DNA from: Diadema antillarum
Taxonomy: Eukaryota
Length of the DNA: 64,000 nt
Direction of reading: 5' to 3'
Assembly: GCF_040938485.1 (NCBI RefSeq)
Contig: NW_027271004.1
Location: forward strand, 868,001-932,000
Shown here: piece after piece, positions 38,667-50,729 of the stretch
How positions within the stretch are numbered: the first letter of the stretch is position 1
Layout: each line of letters begins with the position of its first letter
Notes under the pieces: generated by a model
What the model saw: the letters and a program-made list of their open reading frames with translations, nothing else
Databases searched by the model: none
What the model was told of the DNA's origin: nothing
Position numbers and translations under genes: made by a program

Positions 38667-39981
38667 TTATACCCCCGCCAAACGAAGTTTGAAGGGGGTA
38701 TATAGGAATCAGCGGATGGTCGGGCGGTCGGGCGGTCGGTCGGTCGGGCGGGCGGTCGGGCGGTCGGGCGGTCGGTCCGTTGCAAATCTTGCATCGCGAA
38801 CTACTTCCTCAGTTTTCAACCGATTCCCATAAAACTTGGCACAGATGTGTGCCTTGGGTTGTAGATGTGCAAGACGTATTTTTTGACAGTACCCAAAAGT
38901 ACGTTGCCATGGTAACGGCATATTATGGGCAAAAATGGGTACAAATCTTGCGTCGCGAACTCCTCCCACAGTTTTTAATAAATTTTTATGAAATTAGGTA
39001 CAGATGTTCGTCTGAATATGTTAATGTGCAAGACACATATTTCCGCAGTGGCAAAAAGTGCGTTGCCATGGTAACGGCATGTTATTGGTAAAATATAGGG
39101 CAAAATGCTTCATGGCATAACTGCTTCATCAGTGTTCTTCCAATTCTCATGGAATTCATATTGAATGTTTGTCTTAGGATATAGGTCAGCATGACACATT
39201 TCTTGACAGTGACAAAAAGTATGTTGCCATGGTAACAGCTCACATATTATGAGCCAAAATGATGGAAAATTTTGTGTTGCAAACTACTTCCTCAGTTTTT
39301 GCCCAATTTCCATGAAACTTGGTACAGATGTGTGCCTTTGGTTGTAGATGTGCAAGACGCATTTTTTGACAGTACCCGAAAGTACGTTGCCATGGTAACG
39401 GCATATTAATGGCAGAAGATCAAGGAAAGATCTTGCGGATTTAACTACTTCCTCAGTTTTTTGACCAAAGCTTATGAAATGTGGCACACACCTTGATCTT
39501 GGTGGGAAGATGTGGAAGACATATTTTTCGGACGTGTCGGAAGCTGCGTTGCCATGGTAACGGCATATAAATGGCAGAAGATCAAGGAAAGATCTTGCGG
39601 ATTGAACTACTTTCTCTGTATTCGACTGAAGCTCATGAAATGTGGCACACACATTGGTCTTGGTGGGAAGATGTGCAAGACATATTTTTTGGACGTGTCG
39701 GAAGCTGCGTTGCCATGGTAACAGCATGTTAATGGTGGAAGATCAAGGAAAGATCTTGTGGATTGAACTACTTCCTCAGTTTTTGACAAAAGCTTATGAA
39801 ATGTGGCACACACAATAGTCTTGGTGGGAAGATGTGCAAGACATATTTTTTGGACGTGTCGGAAGCTGCGTTGCCATGGTAACGGCATTTAAATGGCAGA
39901 AGATCAAGGAAAGATCATTCCTTGGGTAAGACTGTCATCACGGGGCGGGGGTATTAATCACCTTAAGTGATATTTCTAGTT
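38667..39981 (+). mobile_element. DINE-1/HINE-like (Helentron-associated) non-autonomous element
   Basis: 5' TTATACCCCCGCC with inverted GGGGGTATA; (GGTC/GGGC)n microsatellite; central ~161-bp tandem array; 3' subTIR GGCGGGGGTAT, then a short stem-loop (ATCAC..TTAA..GTGAT) and CTAGTT. Confidence 0.8.
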
Positions 39982-43705: not shown

Positions 43706-43990
43706 CAGTATGCATGTTAATATGAAGAGTTTGTTCTCAAAAACCAATAAGTCAATTTTTGAAGATTTTGAAGTACGGTGTCTGTCATAAAGTACAAAAT
43801 AATACCTTTTAAATGATATATTGGTCACTACATATAAAGGTACATTTTTGAAGTTATGGTCAAAAGAAGCAAAAAATTTCTTATTATTCTCTTTATTTTT
43901 CTTGACCTTTAATCGCAAATATCTCCATTTGGCAAATGTGGACTTATTGGTTTTTGCGAACAAACTCTTCATATGTTCTCTACATACGAG
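43706..43990. mobile_element. Inverted-repeat (MITE-like) segment
   Basis: ATATGAAGAGTTTGTTCTCAAAAACCAATAAGTC is inverted as GACTTATTGGTTTTTGCGAACAAACTCTTCATAT. Confidence 0.6.
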
Positions 43991-44705: not shown

Positions 44706-46580
44706 TCATCCGTTGACAGGCAGCGTGATGTCAGGGGGCAACTCCCACACGCAGTCAAGGCAAAGGGCGGATTTGCACTCGTCACAGTCGCCAAATTCCT
44801 TAGCCCGCACGTACTCGGTCTCTACTCCCGCGACCGTCAACTTCAGCCGGCCACGCGACGAAATCGATGAATATGGCTGTCGACTTGGGATTGGCAGGAC
44901 ACTCGATTCGGGTGACGGGCTGCTTGTGCTGTTCCTGAAACGTGTTCCAAGACTTATCTTGACTCTTCCCTTTGCAGATAAGATGTGCGAGGTATCGCTA
45001 GGCTTGGGGGCATCGCTGCCTTCCGTTCCTTCCGTGCCTTCCTCTGGCTCTAGCTCTCGCACAACTTCCTCAGAAATGTTAACAGCTTCTTTGGCGGTAT
45101 CAGCAGCTTCCTCGGAGGTGTTAACAGCTTCTTTGGCGGTATTAGCAGCTTCCTCGGAGATGTTGACAGCTTCTTTGGCGGTGTTAACTGCTTCTTCGGA
45201 AGTGTTGGCAGCTTTCTCTGGGGTGCTGGCAGCTTCCTCGGAGGTGTTAACATCTTCTTTGGCGGTGTTATTAGCAGCTTCCTCGGAGGTGTTGACAGCT
45301 TGTTCGGAAGTGTTAATAGCATCTACTTCCTCGGAGGTGTTAATAGCAGCTTCCTCGGAGGTGTTGTAATTAGCAACTTCTTCTGAGGGATTAACAGCTT
45401 CTTCGGAGATGTTGTCAGCTTCCCCAGAGGTGTTATTAGCTTCCTCGGAAGTGTTAATAGCAGCTTCCTCGGAGGTGTTGACAGCTTCTTCGGAAGTATT
45501 AATAGCAGCTTCCTCGGAGGTGTTAACAGCTTCTTCGGAAGTGTAAGCAGCTTCCTCTGAGGTGCTGGCAGTTTCCTCGGAAATGTTAACAGCTTCTTTG
45601 GCGGTGTTATTAGCAGCTTCCTCGGAAATGTTAACAGCTTCTTTGGCGGTGTTAGCAGCTTCCTCGGAGGTGTTGACAGCTTCTTTGGCGGCGAGAGCAG
45701 CTTCCTCGGAGGTGTTGACAGCTTCTTCAGAAGTGGTAACAGCCGCAGCTTTTTCGGAGGTGTTAGCAGCTACCTGGAAAGTGTTATTAGCAGCTTCCTC
45801 GGCGGTGTTGACAGCTTCTTCGGAAGGGTAAGCAGCTTCATCTGGGGTGATAACAGCTTCTTCGGGGATATTTATAGCTGCTTCCTCAGATGAGGTGTTA
45901 GCGGCTTCTTCTGAGGTGCTAGCTGCTTCCTCGGAGGTGTTAACACCTTCGTTGACGATGTCAGCAGCGACCTGGGATGTGTTAACAGCTTCCTCGGAGG
46001 TATTAACGGCTTTTGCGCAGGTGTTCATAGCAGTTTCCTCGGAGGTGTTAGCAACTTCTTCTGAGGTGTTAACAGCTTCTTCTGACGTGTTATCAGCTTT
46101 GCCAGAGGTGTTGGCTTCATCGGAGGTGTCAGCAGCTTCCTCGGAAGTGTTTATAGCAGCTTCCTCGGAGGTACAAACAACTTCCACGGAGTTGCTAGCA
46201 GCTTCCCTGGAGGTGTTTGCAGCTTCCTTGGAGGTGATAGCAACTTCTTCTGAATTGTTAATGTACGCTTCTTCTGAGGTGTTAGCTGATTCCCCAGAGG
46301 TGTTATTAGCTTCCTCGGAAGCATTTATATCAGTTTCCCAGGAGGTATGAACAGCTTCCTCGGAGTTGTTAGCAGCTTTCCCGGAGTTGTTGGCTGCTTC
46401 TGAGCACAATCTGCCGTTCTTTCTCTCAACAACAGAGTTCATGTCATCCCCATTTAAGCTATGCTTTGTAAAATGTGATCCGCAGTTGGCTTGGTTGTTG
46501 GAAACGTCACATTTTGCCTTGCTATCCTCGCGGATCGGTGGAAATTCACTTGTTGATTTCAGCATGTTTGTGCTTTCCAT
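44706..46580 (-). CDS. Intronless 624-aa acidic tandem-repeat protein (N-T-S-E-E-A-A/V units) with C-terminal CxxC-x4-CxxC
   Basis: 1875-nt uninterrupted ORF; the repeat units differ largely at codon third positions (ACC/ACT, TCC/TCA, GAG/GAA); unique N- and C-terminal flanks; an upstream in-frame TGA bounds the ORF. Confidence 0.7.
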   Translation of the reverse strand: MESTNMLKSTSEFPPIREDSKAKCDVSNNQANCGSHFTKHSLNGDDMNSVVERKNGRLCSEAANNSGKAANNSEEAVHTSWETDINASEEANNTSGESANTSEEAYINNSEEVAITSKEAANTSREAASNSVEVVCTSEEAAINTSEEAADTSDEANTSGKADNTSEEAVNTSEEVANTSEETAMNTCAKAVNTSEEAVNTSQVAADIVNEGVNTSEEAASTSEEAANTSSEEAAINIPEEAVITPDEAAYPSEEAVNTAEEAANNTFQVAANTSEKAAAVTTSEEAVNTSEEAALAAKEAVNTSEEAANTAKEAVNISEEAANNTAKEAVNISEETASTSEEAAYTSEEAVNTSEEAAINTSEEAVNTSEEAAINTSEEANNTSGEADNISEEAVNPSEEVANYNTSEEAAINTSEEVDAINTSEQAVNTSEEAANNTAKEDVNTSEEAASTPEKAANTSEEAVNTAKEAVNISEEAANTAKEAVNTSEEAADTAKEAVNISEEVVRELEPEEGTEGTEGSDAPKPSDTSHILSAKGRVKISLGTRFRNSTSSPSPESSVLPIPSRQPYSSISSRGRLKLTVAGVETEYVRAKEFGDCDECKSALCLDCVWELPPDITLPVNG

Positions 46581-48410
46581 TTGGCTCCGTCAGGTGTTAT
46601 AGGCAGGTGGATATTGCCTCTACAACCTCTCTGCGTTGCAAACTGTCCTACAGCGAATTATAACGTGGAATATAGTATGCTCGCTTCCTGCACAAGCTTT
46701 TATCAGCGTTATCAAAGTCAACAATGTTGACACATTCGACTGCCTCTCAATGACTACGCGGTAGAAGGACTGCACTGGGGAATCCCCAGTGTTGATAGTC
46801 TTAGTTTCTAGCCTAGTTGCCGAGGCGAGGCGATGGTGGGTCCTTGCCATGCTTAAATTGATTGAAAGTGTTTGTCCTTTTTTGAAGAATACAGAACATG
46901 GGTAGATTGTTGTTGACAGTGAGCAGACCTTCAGGAGATGAGTATGCAAGTTTAAAATACGAGGGACTGCAGTAGCTGCAGCGTGGACCCCGCTTTGACC
47001 ACCACACCACCAGTTCAGGTCATCCATACCATTTAATCAGGTAGGTGGTGAAAAAACGTGTGCAGTGGCGGATCTATGGGGGAGGGGGTGGGGTACCATG
47101 CACTATGTAATTAGTAATGCTCGAAAAGCGCACTGAAATTCCCAATCAAATATATACAAGCACACATAATCATATAATAAGTATATATCTTATTATACAT
47201 ATACATTGTAATAAACATACATGTGTACACACACATAGGTGTTCATATATCTCACTAAAATAAAATGGTAAATCAACATTCTGAGTGTTAAATTCAACAT
47301 TCAACAATAGGTTGGAGTGACATTTAAATTGTTGATTTACCATTTCATTCTTATAGTAAATGTATGGATATAGCGTCGATTGTCCGCCACCGGCGTGAAA
47401 CCACCGGCAGTGGACAAGACGCCAAAGCACAGGTACGCCTATTATATATCAATATGTATACACATATATATCAGGGATCAACATTAGCAGTTCAAGTGTC
47501 GGGCCACCAAATTTCCATGAAAGGGTGTGTACAGTTCTGGTCGAGGTAAGGATTTAGCTTTTAACGTCTCGCGAGATATTCAGAACCACTCTATGAGATG
47601 TCACAGGGCAAGCAATTCTAAGGAGTATCAAAAGTTTATTTGATGAAAATCGGTTATTGAAATGGCTGAGATATAAAAAAAGGTGAAACAAAGAGATCCT
47701 TATAAAAGGCGTGGCCTGTAGTATTATATTATTTTTACTTTTTTTGGGGGGGGATATCTCTGCCATTTGAAAACCAACTTTTATCAAATAAACGTTGAAT
47801 CCTTCTTAAAATTACATGCTCTTTCATATTTCATAAGAGGTTCCTCATCTCACTTAGGAATGTAAAAAAAAAAAAGAATCCCCACCTCAACCAGTACTGT
47901 ATACAGCCCCTGGTTATCCTTTGGTGACCCGATTTAAGATTCAAAACAGGTTGTTTGTCTCCATTTATATCGGGCCACTGCATTTTTTTTTTCAGGCCAC
48001 CAAAACTTCATATTTGACAATTGAAAGAGACACCAGAAGAAAAAAAATAGTGGCGAGTCCTGTTTATGAATGTGTATAGCATCTTATTAACCGTCATGCC
48101 AAGCCATTTTTACCGCAACACTATACACCTGGGGTATTTCATGAAGTATTTGTCCGACAAAGTTGTCGGACAAATTTGCTCTCAGCCAATCAGATGCAAG
48201 GATTTTAGTAGCTTGTAATAGTTTGTCAGAGAAATATCCGACCAAAATGCTTCATGAAATGCTCCCCTGATGTCAAATTACTTAAATTTACGTTAAAAAT
48301 GAAGCTAAAAACAGAACCGCCCCCGAAAATTAGGTCAATGCCAAACAGTCATTGAGTTCAATGTTTGAAATTCAACTCACCTTTGTGTGGTGTGGTGTGC
48401 TGTGTTTGTT

Positions 48411-48414
<4 letters not shown>

Positions 48415-48477
<63 letters not shown>
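48415..48477. repeat. (TG)n microsatellite
   Basis: Directly visible. Confidence 0.95.
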
Positions 48478-48478
<1 letters not shown>

Positions 48479-48590
48479 CGGAGTGAGCGATTTAAAGAAT
48501 GGAGGGGCGGTCCCCTCAGGTAGGCATCTCCCTGGCATGGTCTACTCGACTGTGGTTCTGCTTAGTAGATGCTCCATCGAGGTCATTTAA

Positions 48591-48969
48591 AGGGATGGTA
48601 CAGTACAGTGGAGATGAGAATTGGGCTTTAAACAGTTTGAGAGATACTAAGAAAGAACTTGTGATATAGTACAGAACATACCATTTTAAGAGGAATTCAA
48701 AGTTTATTTGATAAAAATCAGGTTTGGAATGACTGAAACATTCAAAAATAAAGTAAAACAAAGCGATCGTAGTAAAGTGTGGGTCCCACACTTTATTACA
48801 ATCGCCCCTTTTTGGATATCTCAGCCATTTTAAAACCAATTTTCATCAAATAAAGGTTCGATTCCTCATAGAATTACATGTTCTTTCATTTCATTAGAGG
48901 TTTCTCATCATTTCACCAAAAAATGTTCGAAACCTGAAATTTGGTCTCAACCAAAACTATACAGTCCCT
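48591..48969. mobile_element. Kolobok-type non-autonomous element, family A, with TTAA TSD
   Basis: TTAA|AGGGATGGTACAGTA...TATACAGTCCCT|TTAA; homologous to 9312-9691. Confidence 0.85.
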
Positions 48970-49192
48970 TTAAAAGAAGGCTGCACCGTTTTTCTAAGCA
49001 GAAACATATTAACAAAATATGCATGTCTTAAAGTGAGTTTTTACTGCAACAAATAGAATACTCTACATTGAGAAAGGGAAGCGTAGATCTGTGTCCAACC
49101 TCCAGATAGGATGGACCCTACTTTGCAGAGGAATTTTGCCCAGGATATACACACGCGGCTGACAATTTCTCCTCAAATTGGGTCGGCCCATA

Positions 49193-49223
<31 letters not shown>

Positions 49224-49349
49224 ACAGACAGATGCAATAACACATGCGCTTGTAAACATGAGTTACTTATTCAAATTCATGAAATACTTCCGTCGAGATG
49301 TTTTTATTGCAACTGATAGACAAATTGCAGCACTTGCTGTCGGGCGAAA

Positions 49350-49420
49350 TATCGGTGGTGTGGTGGAAATGACGCCTGTCCGGAGATCAGAAGGGCGTAG
49401 GTTCGAATCCTGCTCGAGTA
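49350..49420 (+). mobile_element. tRNA-derived SINE head fragment
   Basis: A-box-like TGGTGTGGTGG and B-box GGTTCGAATCC, but no complete acceptor or anticodon stems. Confidence 0.55.
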
Positions 49421-50729
49421 CGTACGCCCATGATATTTTTATCATGGCTACTACTAACATACTGATCAATTCAGTGCTTATTTACGTCGATGTAGGGCAA
49501 CTTGTCAATCAGTTGCAATGAGTAACCTAAGTAATTATTTTGGAAAAGTCCATTCTTACCGTCCATTATTACAACTTACTATAGCATACGTCACACCCGG
49601 GCAAAGAAACAGCACAGTCCACAGTGCATGATGTCAGGTGGCTTTTTCTGTTCAGTTGTTTGTTGTTTCTTAGTTGTTGTTTTTCTTGTAATCAGATCTG
49701 AGTGCAGGTGATCGCGTTATATACGTGTATAAGCTGTAAAAGTCATGCCTGTTCTGAGTATTGAAGAACACGCTTCGATCAATTTTCCACAGTCCATATC
49801 ATATTCTTTATTGTAGAGACCGTATATCCTAAATTTCACTGGAGCCCACAACGGTTTCAGTATATCGCATCACTTCCCTTGATAATTCCTATAGACCTTA
49901 TATATTTGGCCACTCAGAGCTTGAAGATTAAAATTTTAAGCATACAAGTGAAGTGTGTGGAAACATAGGCTCTCTATATGTATCCATATTCCTTTTCCGG
50001 AGTTCACCTCCCCCCCCCCCCCCATTTTTTTCCAGTCAGTAGAGCTATTGGCGCATTGTTATATATGAATTTGTTTCGATTTTATCTGGCAAATCAGTAG
50101 CAAAATCAGTGTGTGTGTGTGTTTTGGCAGATTGTGCATAATGTTTCATATTTAACTATCGATTACTTTTTTCCAGCATTACATCTTTATCAGTATCGTT
50201 TTGTTATCACTGCAACAAAATTGGCTTTTTGAATGATTATGACGTCTTTGATTTGATTTGATTTCTGCTTTCACTTCTTTTAACACTTTATTTATGAAAC
50301 ATTTTTAATATCTATGCAAATAAATTGCATGTTTTTAACCCTATTCTCACCAGCGGGGGGAGGGGGGAGGGGGAGGGGGGGGGGCTAAAATACCCGACGT
50401 TTCGCGTGATTACTCCCCAACGCATGGTGCTCACGCGGCGATAGTTTATGACTTTTTTCTTTCAAGTATCGCGCAACTTTTGTCCCTACCGGGCATACCT
50501 TTATGAAGCCACGCCCCTTTGAAAATAATTCGTCGACCCAAAAATTGCTCAAAAACATGATTTTGTTTACAAATCCAATGTAAATTGTGTTTTTGCAATT
50601 AATTCATATAAAAATAAATATTTTTACTTTCAATGACTGATAATGATTTATTTTAGCATGATTATGCTTTAAAAAGTTTCTGCGACAAATTTTGGCAGGC
50701 TTCCAACCCACAATTCATATCATATTCAT

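What the first reader, a model, noticed from the sequence alone, without database searches (positions are those of the whole stretch)
44706..46580. Orphan-like 624-aa protein in which most repeats overlap an N-glycosylation sequon with an S-x-E phosphorylation motif
Seen: about 445 aa of 7-8-aa units (roughly 60 by division) such as ANTSEEA, VNTSEEA, INTSEEA and VNISEEA, with synonymous variation and higher-order blocks (TAKEAVNISEEAAN). Established: N-x-S/T is the N-glycosylation sequon, S-x-E is the Fam20C motif of secreted biomineral phosphoproteins, and T-x-x-E is a CK2 site. Inference: a polyanionic, Ca-binding or spacer protein, possibly skeletal matrix or gamete coat. Caveat: no signal peptide or strong in-frame acceptor is visible, so a cytosolic CK2-phosphorylated protein is equally possible.
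Basis: partly seen in the sequence, partly recalled or inferred. Interest (0 to 1): 0.75.

Follow-up and report, generated by a model that had tools for sequence, protein, structure and literature searches.

The report
Acidic repeat protein from decayed RING gene
A sea-urchin gene without introns encodes a very acidic protein of about 60 short repeats that has no export signal and descends from a small zinc-finger (RING) protein family, so it is most likely an intracellular, fast-evolving lineage-specific protein and not a secreted skeletal or egg-coat phosphoprotein.

Summary
A 624-codon open frame lies at 44706-46580 (-). It contains 447 residues of degenerate 7-8-residue units such as (A/V)NTSEEA, with 42 N-x-S/T sequons and 44 S-x-E motifs. 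31 units carry both motifs overlapped.

It is very likely coding:
- It is the only one of six frames without a stop across the array. The three other frames whose unit consensus has no stop carry 4, 6 and 9.
- Third codon positions vary most.
- The second haplotype (contig C42) keeps a 593-codon open frame, and all five indels are multiples of 3.
- The 21-nt unit occurs nowhere else in the 1.75-Gb assembly.

It is not a true orphan. The last ~40 residues, a C-x2-C-x5-C-x2-C knuckle, match an unnamed family of ~200-residue transcribed proteins (hhalign probability 97.5%, E 8e-12). These carry an N-terminal RING-HC cysteine pattern plus this same C-terminal module. The urchin N-terminus is a colinear, decayed RING relic (shuffle z = 7).

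No hydrophobic segment exists anywhere in the protein, and an in-frame stop lies 4 codons upstream of the ATG. The secreted, N-glycosylated, Fam20C-phosphorylated reading is therefore not supported. An intracellular polyanion with 46 CK2-type sites, anchored by a conserved zinc knuckle, is the best reading.

Expression is unproven and pN/pS between haplotypes is ~1. Interest is moderate.

The parts
44706..46580 (-). Complete single-exon coding sequence, 624 codons plus TGA. Predicted protein is 65 kDa, pI 4.05, net charge -94.
   Evidence: The ESM Atlas holds this exact 624-aa sequence, so a public gene model with this CDS exists.
46401..46580 (-). N-terminal non-repeat region (residues 1-60). 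It is highly divergent between haplotypes: 14% substitutions and a 96-nt in-frame indel.
46458..46514 (-). Decayed RING relic (residues 23-41, K-C-D-V-S-N-N-Q-A-N-C-G-S-H-F-T-K-H-S). It is colinear with ligands 1-2 and 5-6 of the family's RING-HC. A 14-residue gap removes ligands 3-4, and ligands 2, 6, 7 and 8 are substituted or absent. The whole relic is deleted in the C42 haplotype.
   Evidence: BLASTP E 3e-4. hhalign E 4.5e-4, probability 33%. Shuffle test z = 7.0, 0 of 2000, with the same register against three relatives. Deletion in allele B.
45060..46400 (-). Tandem array of about 60 degenerate 21/24-nt units (residues 61-507, consensus (A/V)-N-T-S-E-E-A), with net charge -90 and higher-order 42-135-nt blocks.
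   Evidence: The unit is found only here and at the allelic C42 locus in the whole assembly.
44709..45059 (-). C-terminal non-repeat region (residues 508-624): an acidic, Ser/Pro-rich linker followed by the conserved module.
   Evidence: 1 substitution in 363 nt between haplotypes.
44739..44852 (-). Conserved C-terminal module (residues 577-614): a predicted beta-hairpin, then E-Y-x-R-x-K and a C-x2-C-x5-C-x2-C-x-W-E knuckle (the four Cys lie at 44751-44786). It is shared with the P0002/P0005/P0007/P0008 family.
   Evidence: phmmer over 1.84 billion representatives, P0002 E 1.2e-4. BLASTP 54% identity, E 5e-12. hhalign probability 97.5%, E 8e-12. All 15 invariant columns are kept. Shuffle z = 24. 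The fold models are of low confidence.
46581..46710 (-). Proximal upstream region, presumed core promoter and 5' UTR. It holds TATA-like GATAAAAG at 46704-46697, TATAAT at 46662-46657 and an in-frame TGA at 46592-46590, and the ATG has A at -3 and G at +4. Roughly 2 differences in 130 nt between haplotypes, against ~6% further upstream.
   Evidence: The promoter role is inferred, not shown.
43892..43913 (-). First canonical poly(A) signals downstream of the stop: ATTAAA at 43913 and AATAAA at 43897, about 800 nt after the TGA.
   Evidence: Their use is not shown.

Best explanation
This is a real, intronless, lineage-specific protein-coding gene of a sea urchin. It descends from a small echinoderm family of ~200-residue proteins with an N-terminal RING-HC finger and a C-terminal C4 zinc knuckle. 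In this lineage the RING decayed. A short acidic segment between the two zinc modules, possibly the family's conserved S-(E/Q)-E-A-A motif, was amplified by slippage or unequal exchange into about 60 units. The C-terminal knuckle stayed intact. The product lacks any signal peptide, so it stays in the cytosol or nucleus. It would be a disordered polyanion (net charge -94, 46 CK2-type S/T-x-x-E/D sites) tethered through its zinc knuckle to whatever partner the family binds, without E3 ligase capacity. Shown here: the open frame and its coding signatures, the homology of both termini, the absence of hydrophobic segments, and in-frame allelic length variation. Inferred: transcription, intracellular location, phosphorylation, partner binding, and the origin of the repeat from the S-E-E-A-A motif.
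For: This is the only stop-free frame of six across 446 codons, while comparable frames carry 4-9 stops. Unit lengths of 6, 7, 8 and 9 aa mean many indels, all multiples of 3, in an array with 7-8% indels. The third codon position is the most variable. The second haplotype (C42, colinear over more than 40 kb at 92-98% identity) keeps an open 593-codon frame. Its indels of 96, 45, 21, 21 and 48 nt are all in frame, whereas flanking non-coding indels are mostly not multiples of 3. The unit and the termini are single-locus in the 1.75-Gb assembly. C-terminal module homology has hhalign probability 97.5% and E 8e-12, with all family-invariant residues kept. A colinear N-terminal RING relic gives z = 7. 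Decay of the N-terminus beside an intact C-terminus argues for continued selection on the C-terminus, which requires the repeat frame to stay open. The relatives are transcribed: contigs from 17 runs, many sharing one 5' end. They are intronless on a genomic contig that carries a SINE-like element abundant in this urchin. The family holds S-(E/Q)-E-A-A at an invariant position between the two zinc modules. There is no hydrophobic segment, the ATG has a good context with an in-frame stop just upstream, and the proximal promoter-like region is conserved. The Atlas holds the identical 624-aa model, with pLDDT 0.41, which fits disorder.
Against: There is no solid expression evidence. The only run that holds any of the locus is a small 'echinoderm metagenome' library of uncertain RNA status, with one 214-nt contig at 45913-46126. 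Chance genomic carry-over could explain it. pN/pS between the haplotypes is about 1.0 (26 non-synonymous and 8 synonymous changes). The low divergence of the C-terminal CDS (0.28%) is matched by the 3' flank (0.5-1%), so polymorphism shows no purifying selection. Most allelic indels are whole repeat units, which are in frame by construction. The RING relic is deleted in one haplotype. The zinc-knuckle fold models are of low confidence.
Confidence: 0.6

Rival explanations
1. A dying gene or relic. On this reading the locus is a former RING gene that lost its function, and the repeat array is a minisatellite whose frame is still open only because its unit is 21 nt and lacks stops.
For: pN/pS is ~1 between haplotypes. 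The RING is destroyed, and its relic is deleted in one haplotype. The N-terminus diverges by 14%. There is no firm transcript evidence. Whole-unit indels are in frame automatically.
Against: There are zero stops in 446 codons, against 4-9 in the control frames of the same array. The many within-unit indels are all multiples of 3. Third positions vary most. The C-terminal module keeps every family-invariant residue while the N-terminus has decayed. The 96-nt indel outside the repeats is also in frame.
Confidence: 0.2
2. One reading: a secreted, heavily N-glycosylated and Fam20C-phosphorylated polyanion, such as a skeletal matrix or gamete coat protein, with the signal peptide supplied by an unseen upstream exon.
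For: There are 42 sequons and 44 S-x-E motifs, 31 of them overlapping. A plausible internal acceptor (t-g-t-g-c-t-c-a-g just before residue ~60) exists in both haplotypes. If it were used, the divergent N-terminal 60 codons would be intronic.
Against: The ORF has no hydrophobic segment. A crude scan found no signal-peptide-like ATG exon with a consensus donor within 6 kb upstream on the minus strand. An opposite-strand ORF with a TM-like segment at 51458-51772 suggests that another gene starts there. The homologous family is made of RING and zinc-knuckle modules with free cysteines, which is typical of intracellular proteins. The N-terminal 60 codons still align colinearly with the family's RING.
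Confidence: 0.05
3. A fast-evolving reproductive or immune protein. On this reading the gene is functional, but its repeat number and N-terminus are under diversifying selection, as in other polymorphic urchin repeat proteins. The acidic array would be the functional surface, not a passive spacer.
For: There is allelic length polymorphism (593 vs 624 aa), a highly divergent N-terminus, and pN/pS of about 1 overall with 10 non-synonymous and 0 synonymous changes in the first 27 codons. The gene is single-locus, lineage-specific and intronless.
Against: No tissue data exist. With no signal peptide the protein could not act extracellularly. The N-terminal excess of changes lies beside an alignment-ambiguous indel. 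The same pattern is expected under relaxed constraint.
Confidence: 0.12

Closest known systems
Unnamed family of ~200-aa proteins found here (P0002/P0005/P0006, P0007, P0008; from transcriptome contigs and one genomic contig, probably echinoderm)
   Same: The C-terminal module is shared: hairpin, E-Y-x-R/K-x-K/R, D-C-x2-C-(K/R)-(S/A)-A-L-C-x-(D/E)-C-(I/V)-W-E. It shows 50-54% identity, hhalign probability 97.5%. A colinear N-terminal relic is present. Both are intronless. An S-(E/Q)-E-A-A motif sits between the zinc modules.
   Different: The relatives are 201-239 aa with a complete C3HC4 spacing (C-x2-C-x12-C-x3-H-x2-C-x2-C-x14-C-x2-C) and no repeats. The urchin protein is 624 aa, has lost at least 5 of the 8 RING ligands, and has ~447 aa of repeats in place of the ~90-residue helical and basic middle part. 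The family has no Pfam match above threshold, no PDB relative and no name.
RING-HC (C3HC4) E3 ubiquitin ligases (Pfam zf-C3HC4 / zf-RING_2)
   Same: The relatives show the canonical ligand spacing. Weak Pfam, PDB, Foldseek and language-model leads all point to RING domains such as TRIM25, parkin, PML, SIAH1 and Not4.
   Different: All of those matches are below significance. The urchin protein itself has no intact RING, so it cannot be filed as an E3 ligase.
CK2-phosphorylated acidic-serine repeat proteins (for example Nopp140/NOLC1 and treacle), recalled from general knowledge
   Same: It is a long, disordered, repeated acidic Ser/Thr stretch with many S/T-x-x-E/D sites and no signal peptide.
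   Different: There is no sequence homology. The basic stretches that alternate with the acidic ones in those proteins are absent here. Phosphorylation was not tested.
Secreted acidic phosphoproteins phosphorylated by Fam20C (SIBLING/SCPP proteins, phosphophoryn) and urchin spicule matrix proteins, recalled from general knowledge
   Same: It has a high density of S-x-E, strong acidity and a tandem-repeat organisation.
   Different: Those proteins all enter the secretory pathway through a signal peptide, and this one has none. No homology was found.

Membership tests
Secreted Fam20C/N-glycosylated acidic matrix proteins | N-terminal signal peptide or other route into the ER/Golgi lumen | tested here: not met
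   The Kyte-Doolittle maximum is -0.46 in the first 70 aa and 0.9 in the whole protein. An in-frame stop lies 4 codons upstream. A crude scan found no signal-peptide-like upstream exon.
Secreted Fam20C/N-glycosylated acidic matrix proteins | Dense S-x-E motifs and N-x-S/T sequons | tested here: met
   There are 44 S-x-E and 42 sequons, 31 overlapping. These are motifs only, and their use was not shown.
Secreted Fam20C/N-glycosylated acidic matrix proteins | Presence in skeletal or extracellular proteomes, with phospho- or glyco-modification | not testable with these tools
   No proteome data were available.
Unnamed RING + C4-knuckle family (P0005-like) | C-terminal E-Y...D-C-x2-C-x5-C-x2-C-x-W-E module at the extreme C-terminus | tested here: met
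   hhalign probability 97.5%, E 8e-12. All 15 invariant columns are kept.
Unnamed RING + C4-knuckle family (P0005-like) | N-terminal C3HC4 RING with all eight zinc ligands | tested here: not met
   Only a relic is left. The alignment shows ligand 2 as Ser, a 14-residue gap over ligands 3-4, ligand 6 as His, and ligands 7-8 absent.
Unnamed RING + C4-knuckle family (P0005-like) | Compact ~200-aa architecture with a conserved helical and basic middle region | tested here: not met
   The protein is 624 aa and its middle is replaced by ~60 acidic repeats.
Unnamed RING + C4-knuckle family (P0005-like) | Intronless coding sequence | tested here: met
   P0008 is uninterrupted on the genomic contig L027. 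The urchin CDS is one open frame.
CK2-substrate acidic repeat proteins | Clusters of S/T-x-x-E/D in a cytosolic or nuclear protein | tested here: met
   There are 46 minimal sites and no secretion signal.
CK2-substrate acidic repeat proteins | Demonstrated phosphorylation | not testable with these tools
   This needs phosphoproteomics or an in-vitro kinase assay.
Non-coding minisatellite open by chance | Stops and frameshifts accumulate equally in all frames whose unit consensus has no stop, and there is no codon-position bias | tested here: not met
   The counts are 0 stops against 4, 6 and 9. The third position is the most variable. All indels are multiples of 3 within and between haplotypes.

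The most novel reading that the evidence does not exclude
The locus may record, within one gene family, the replacement of a catalytic RING domain architecture by a new polyanionic repeat domain. On this reading a conserved 5-residue motif (S-E-E-A-A) in the linker of a 200-aa RING protein was amplified about 60-fold and the RING then decayed. Only the C-terminal zinc knuckle stayed under selection, giving a RING-less, highly charged adaptor or decoy that is still changing length between haplotypes (593 vs 624 aa).
Probability: 0.3. Interest if true: 0.5.

Novelty: new variant of a known kind. Interest (0 to 1): 0.35.

Why it matters
If the gene is expressed, it gives a clean, datable example of how a lineage-specific "orphan-looking" protein arises from an older gene. 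A tiny internal motif expands into a large disordered acidic domain, one ancestral domain (the RING) decays, and another (the C4 knuckle) is retained. It also flags a small, unnamed echinoderm zinc-finger family with a conserved C-terminal module of unknown function.

There is also a methodological lesson. The striking sequon/Fam20C motif density is most likely a by-product of the repeat unit in a protein that never enters the secretory pathway. Motif counting alone would therefore have misfiled it as a biomineralisation protein.

Tried and rejected
**Searches that found nothing useful**
- Whole-protein word search: no hit. The same search restricted to residues 505-624, candidate lengths 343-1092 aa: no hit.
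- Pfam on the ORF: only a sub-threshold TFIIH C1-like match over the knuckle.
- phmmer of the C-terminal 121 aa against 1.84 billion representatives gave four hits. Three (P0001, P0003, P0004) are low-complexity or repeat matches and were rejected. Only P0002 is a true relative.
- Exact look-ups of both alleles in the 15-billion collection and its contig index: absent.
- PDB sequence search with the family profile: nothing significant.

**Structure**
- AlphaFold model of the family: residues 1-115 have moderate confidence, the C-terminus is poor.
- AlphaFold model of the urchin C-terminus: pLDDT 48.
- Foldseek against the PDB: no significant match, only weak RING rows.
- The Atlas structure rows for the urchin protein have TM 0.40 or less and were ignored.

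**Collection scans**
- Viral and metagenome contig scans for family members: none.
- A virus-derived origin, hinted at by Atlas feature neighbours among Nucleocytoviricota RING proteins at scores of 0.89 or less, therefore has no support.

**Literature**
- Run accessions and general terms returned nothing relevant.

**Expression**
- One run, one 214-nt contig, RNA status uncertain. I do not count this as evidence of transcription.

**Synteny and context**
- No nucleotide similarity between the relatives' contigs and the window flanks, so orthology versus paralogy is open.
- Neighbouring ORFs: no Pfam hits. Rfam over 40-52 kb: nothing.

**Constraints observed**
- The six N runs in the window were left untouched.
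Full report
**1. The observation**

The minus strand of the window carries an ATG-to-TGA open frame of 624 codons at 44706-46580. It is by far the longest ORF in the 64 kb.

Tandem Repeats Finder reports one array at 45061-46400. Its periods are 21, 42, 66, 87 and 135 nt, with 66-70% matches and 7-8% indels.

Parsing the protein gives about 60 units in residues 61-507. Thirty-six are exactly 7 aa, ten are 8 aa, and a few are 6 or 9 aa. Typical units are ANTSEEA, VNTSEEA, AINTSEEA, VNISEEA and ANTAKEA.

Motif counts are as follows:

| Motif | Count |
|---|---|
| N-x-S/T sequons | 42 |
| S-x-E | 44 |
| N-x-S-x-E (both overlapped) | 31 |
| S/T-x-x-E/D | 46 |

About half of the units, not "most", therefore carry both motifs overlapped. 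The predicted protein is 65 kDa with pI 4.05 and net charge -94.

**2. Is it coding, or a minisatellite open by chance?**

Several independent signs favour coding.

- **Stops by frame.** Across the 446 codons of the array this frame has no stop. The three other frames whose unit consensus is also stop-free carry 4, 6 and 9 stops, and the remaining two carry 49 and 51. These control frames share the same duplication history. A mean of about 6 stops makes zero improbable, at roughly e^-6 (my rough estimate).
- **Indels within the array.** The array is old enough to have 7-8% indels between units, yet every unit-length change is a multiple of 3.
- **Codon positions.** Among the 36 canonical units, nucleotide entropy is highest at third codon positions: 0.80 against 0.60 and 0.55. 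Synonymous alternation is frequent, for example GAG/GAA, TCC/TCA/TCT and GTT/GTC.
- **Single locus.** The 21-nt unit, allowing one mismatch, occurs 28 times in the 1.75-Gb assembly, and all 28 lie at this locus or its allelic copy. Neither the repeat protein nor the unique termini have other relatives in the genome.

**3. A second haplotype**

The assembly has 2963 contigs and 1.75 Gb. The only sequencing run that holds words of the locus is labelled "echinoderm metagenome".

Contig C42 contains a second copy, colinear with the window for more than 40 kb at 92-98% identity. I read it as the other haplotype; this is an inference.

Its frame is open for 593 codons. The two alleles differ by five indels of 96, 45, 21, 21 and 48 nt, all in frame. 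Indels in the flanking non-coding DNA are mostly not multiples of 3, for example 1, 2, 5, 7, 34 and 43 nt.

Four of the five coding indels are whole repeat units, which are in frame by construction. Only the 96-nt indel in the non-repeat N-terminus is informative.

Substitutions give no sign of constraint:

- pN/pS is 1.0, from 26 non-synonymous and 8 synonymous changes.
- The low divergence of the C-terminal CDS (0.28%) is matched by the 3' flank (0.5-1.0%).
- The N-terminal 60 codons (14%) and the region more than 130 nt upstream (6%) are the most divergent parts.

**4. It is not an orphan**

A phmmer search of the last 121 residues against 1.84 billion representative proteins found one genuine relative, P0002 (201 aa). 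Word searches with that protein added P0005 and P0006 (same cluster), P0007 (68% identical) and P0008 (56%).

These proteins share two modules:

- an N-terminal pattern C-x2-C-x12-C-x3-H-x2-C-x2-C-x14-C-x2-C, which is the RING-HC spacing;
- an extreme C-terminal module with E-Y, D-C-x2-C-(K/R)-(S/A)-A-L-C-x-(D/E)-C-(I/V)-W-E.

The urchin C-terminus (residues 577-614; 44739-44852) aligns to this module as follows:

- BLASTP gives 54% identity and E 5e-12.
- hhalign gives probability 97.5% and E 8e-12.
- All 15 columns invariant in that alignment are kept, including the four Cys, W and E.

The urchin N-terminus (residues ~19-46) aligns colinearly to the family's RING in the same register for all three relatives: A-x-C-D-(V/I)-x-x-N-(Q/E)-A, then a 14-residue gap, then C-G-x-x-F-x-K-H. 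The support is BLASTP E 3e-4, hhalign E 4.5e-4 at only 33% probability, and a shuffle test with z = 7.0 and 0 of 2000.

In that alignment at least five of the eight zinc ligands are gone, so the segment is a RING relic and not a RING. The C42 haplotype has deleted it altogether.

What can be said about the relatives:

- They are transcribed. P0005 lies on contigs from 17 runs, many starting 121 nt before the ATG.
- P0008 is uninterrupted on a 2.6-kb genomic contig.
- That contig also carries a ~185-bp interspersed element matching many copies in this urchin genome (40 matches scored out of 1427 first-look candidates) at 79-88% identity. Its source is therefore probably another echinoid or echinoderm; this is an inference.
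- The family has no Pfam match above threshold, no PDB relative, no significant structural neighbour and no name. All weak leads point to RING domains.

A six-frame search of the urchin genome with P0002 finds only this locus and its allele. The 624-aa gene may therefore be the family's sole representative here.

**5. Where the repeats may have come from**

All family members carry S-(E/Q)-E-A-A (S-E-E-A-A in P0007) at an invariant position between the RING and the C-terminal module. This is the core of the urchin unit (N-T-S-E-E-A-A/V), and it sits in the colinear position.

Amplification of this short segment is an attractive origin for the array. It rests on five residues, so it remains an inference.

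**6. Gene model and location of the product**

- An in-frame TGA lies four codons upstream of the ATG in both haplotypes (46592-46590).
- The only AG between that stop and the ATG has G at -3 and a purine-rich tract, so it is a poor acceptor.
- The ATG has A at -3 and G at +4.
- The 130 nt upstream are nearly identical between haplotypes. They contain a TATA-like GATAAAAG at 46704-46697.
- The first ATTAAA and AATAAA lie about 800 nt past the stop.
- The ESM Atlas holds the identical 624-aa sequence, so a public gene model has the same CDS. Its predicted structure is poor (pLDDT 0.41), as expected for a disordered protein.
- No window of the protein is hydrophobic. KD19 reaches at most 0.9, and the maximum in the first 70 aa is -0.46.
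- A crude scan of 6 kb upstream on the minus strand found no ATG exon with a hydrophobic core and a consensus donor.

One caveat remains. A reasonable acceptor (…t-g-t-g-c-t-c-a-g) sits just before residue ~60 in both haplotypes. An alternative 5' exon therefore cannot be excluded without cDNA.

**7. Interpretation**

The secreted, glycosylated, Fam20C-phosphorylated reading fails its defining test, which is entry into the secretory pathway. It also conflicts with descent from a RING/zinc-knuckle family.

The best reading is an intracellular, disordered polyanion with many CK2-type sites, tethered by a conserved C-terminal zinc knuckle and RING-less. The strongest argument that it is still functional is differential decay. 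The N-terminal RING has degenerated while the C-terminal module keeps every conserved residue, and that module can only be translated if the 1.3-kb repeat frame stays open, which it does.

The main rival is a gene in the course of dying. It is kept alive by the neutral-looking polymorphism and the lack of transcript evidence.

**8. Expression**

One search and one read-laying run were allowed. The only holder is a 2.7-Mb contig set from an "echinoderm metagenome" library whose RNA status is a guess. One 214-nt contig lies on 45913-46126 with a single mismatch. Random genomic carry-over could give this, and I do not count it as evidence of transcription.

**9. Limits**

- Orthology or paralogy with the family could not be tested by synteny.
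- The fold models of the knuckle are unreliable.
- N runs in the window were not touched.

Noticed in passing
G000:C42:185463-187244 (+) (L002:94-1875): This is the allelic copy of the gene on a second contig. It is 593 aa, has five in-frame indels relative to the window, and has lost the RING relic. The region is colinear with the window for more than 40 kb at 92-98% identity, which suggests that the 1.75-Gb assembly holds both haplotypes.
   Followed up: yes
window 47204-49010 versus C42 (about 182390-184820): About 1.8 kb upstream of the gene has no counterpart in the other haplotype, which holds about 2.4 kb of unrelated sequence. This is probably a haplotype-specific insertion, perhaps of mobile elements.
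   Followed up: no
L027:2048-2238 and many places in G000 (for example C197:2610157-2610336): A ~185-bp SINE-like interspersed element gave 1427 first-look candidates in the urchin genome (40 scored), at 79-88% identity to a copy on the foreign contig that encodes P0008. It is useful as a taxonomic marker for that contig.
   Followed up: partly
window 51458-51772 (+): A 104-aa ORF starts with ATG and holds one strongly hydrophobic ~19-residue segment followed by several sequons. It looks like the first exon of a type II membrane protein on the opposite strand. If so, 46581-51457 would be a divergent intergenic region. It has no Pfam hit.
   Followed up: partly
window 52481-53334: A polypyrimidine (C/T-rich) low-complexity block has GC skew -0.46 and an 83-nt degenerate tandem repeat. 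It produces spurious 230-280-aa Pro/Ser/Leu ORFs on the plus strand.
   Followed up: no
window 39346-39916: A 161-nt tandem repeat has 3.5 copies at 88% matches. This is the array another first-stage note describes as carrying phased RFX X-boxes.
   Followed up: no
window 2583-2901: An AGT microsatellite of about 107 copies abuts a masked N run at 2902-3076. Five further N runs of 133-150 nt lie at 7606, 16309, 24042, 53907 and 55950. All were left untouched.
   Followed up: no
window 44713-45369 (+) and 45847-46350 (+): Antisense ORFs of 218 and 167 aa lie over the repeat array. They are by-products of a unit whose reverse frames lack stops, they are interrupted by stops elsewhere in the array, and they are not independent genes.
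   Followed up: yes
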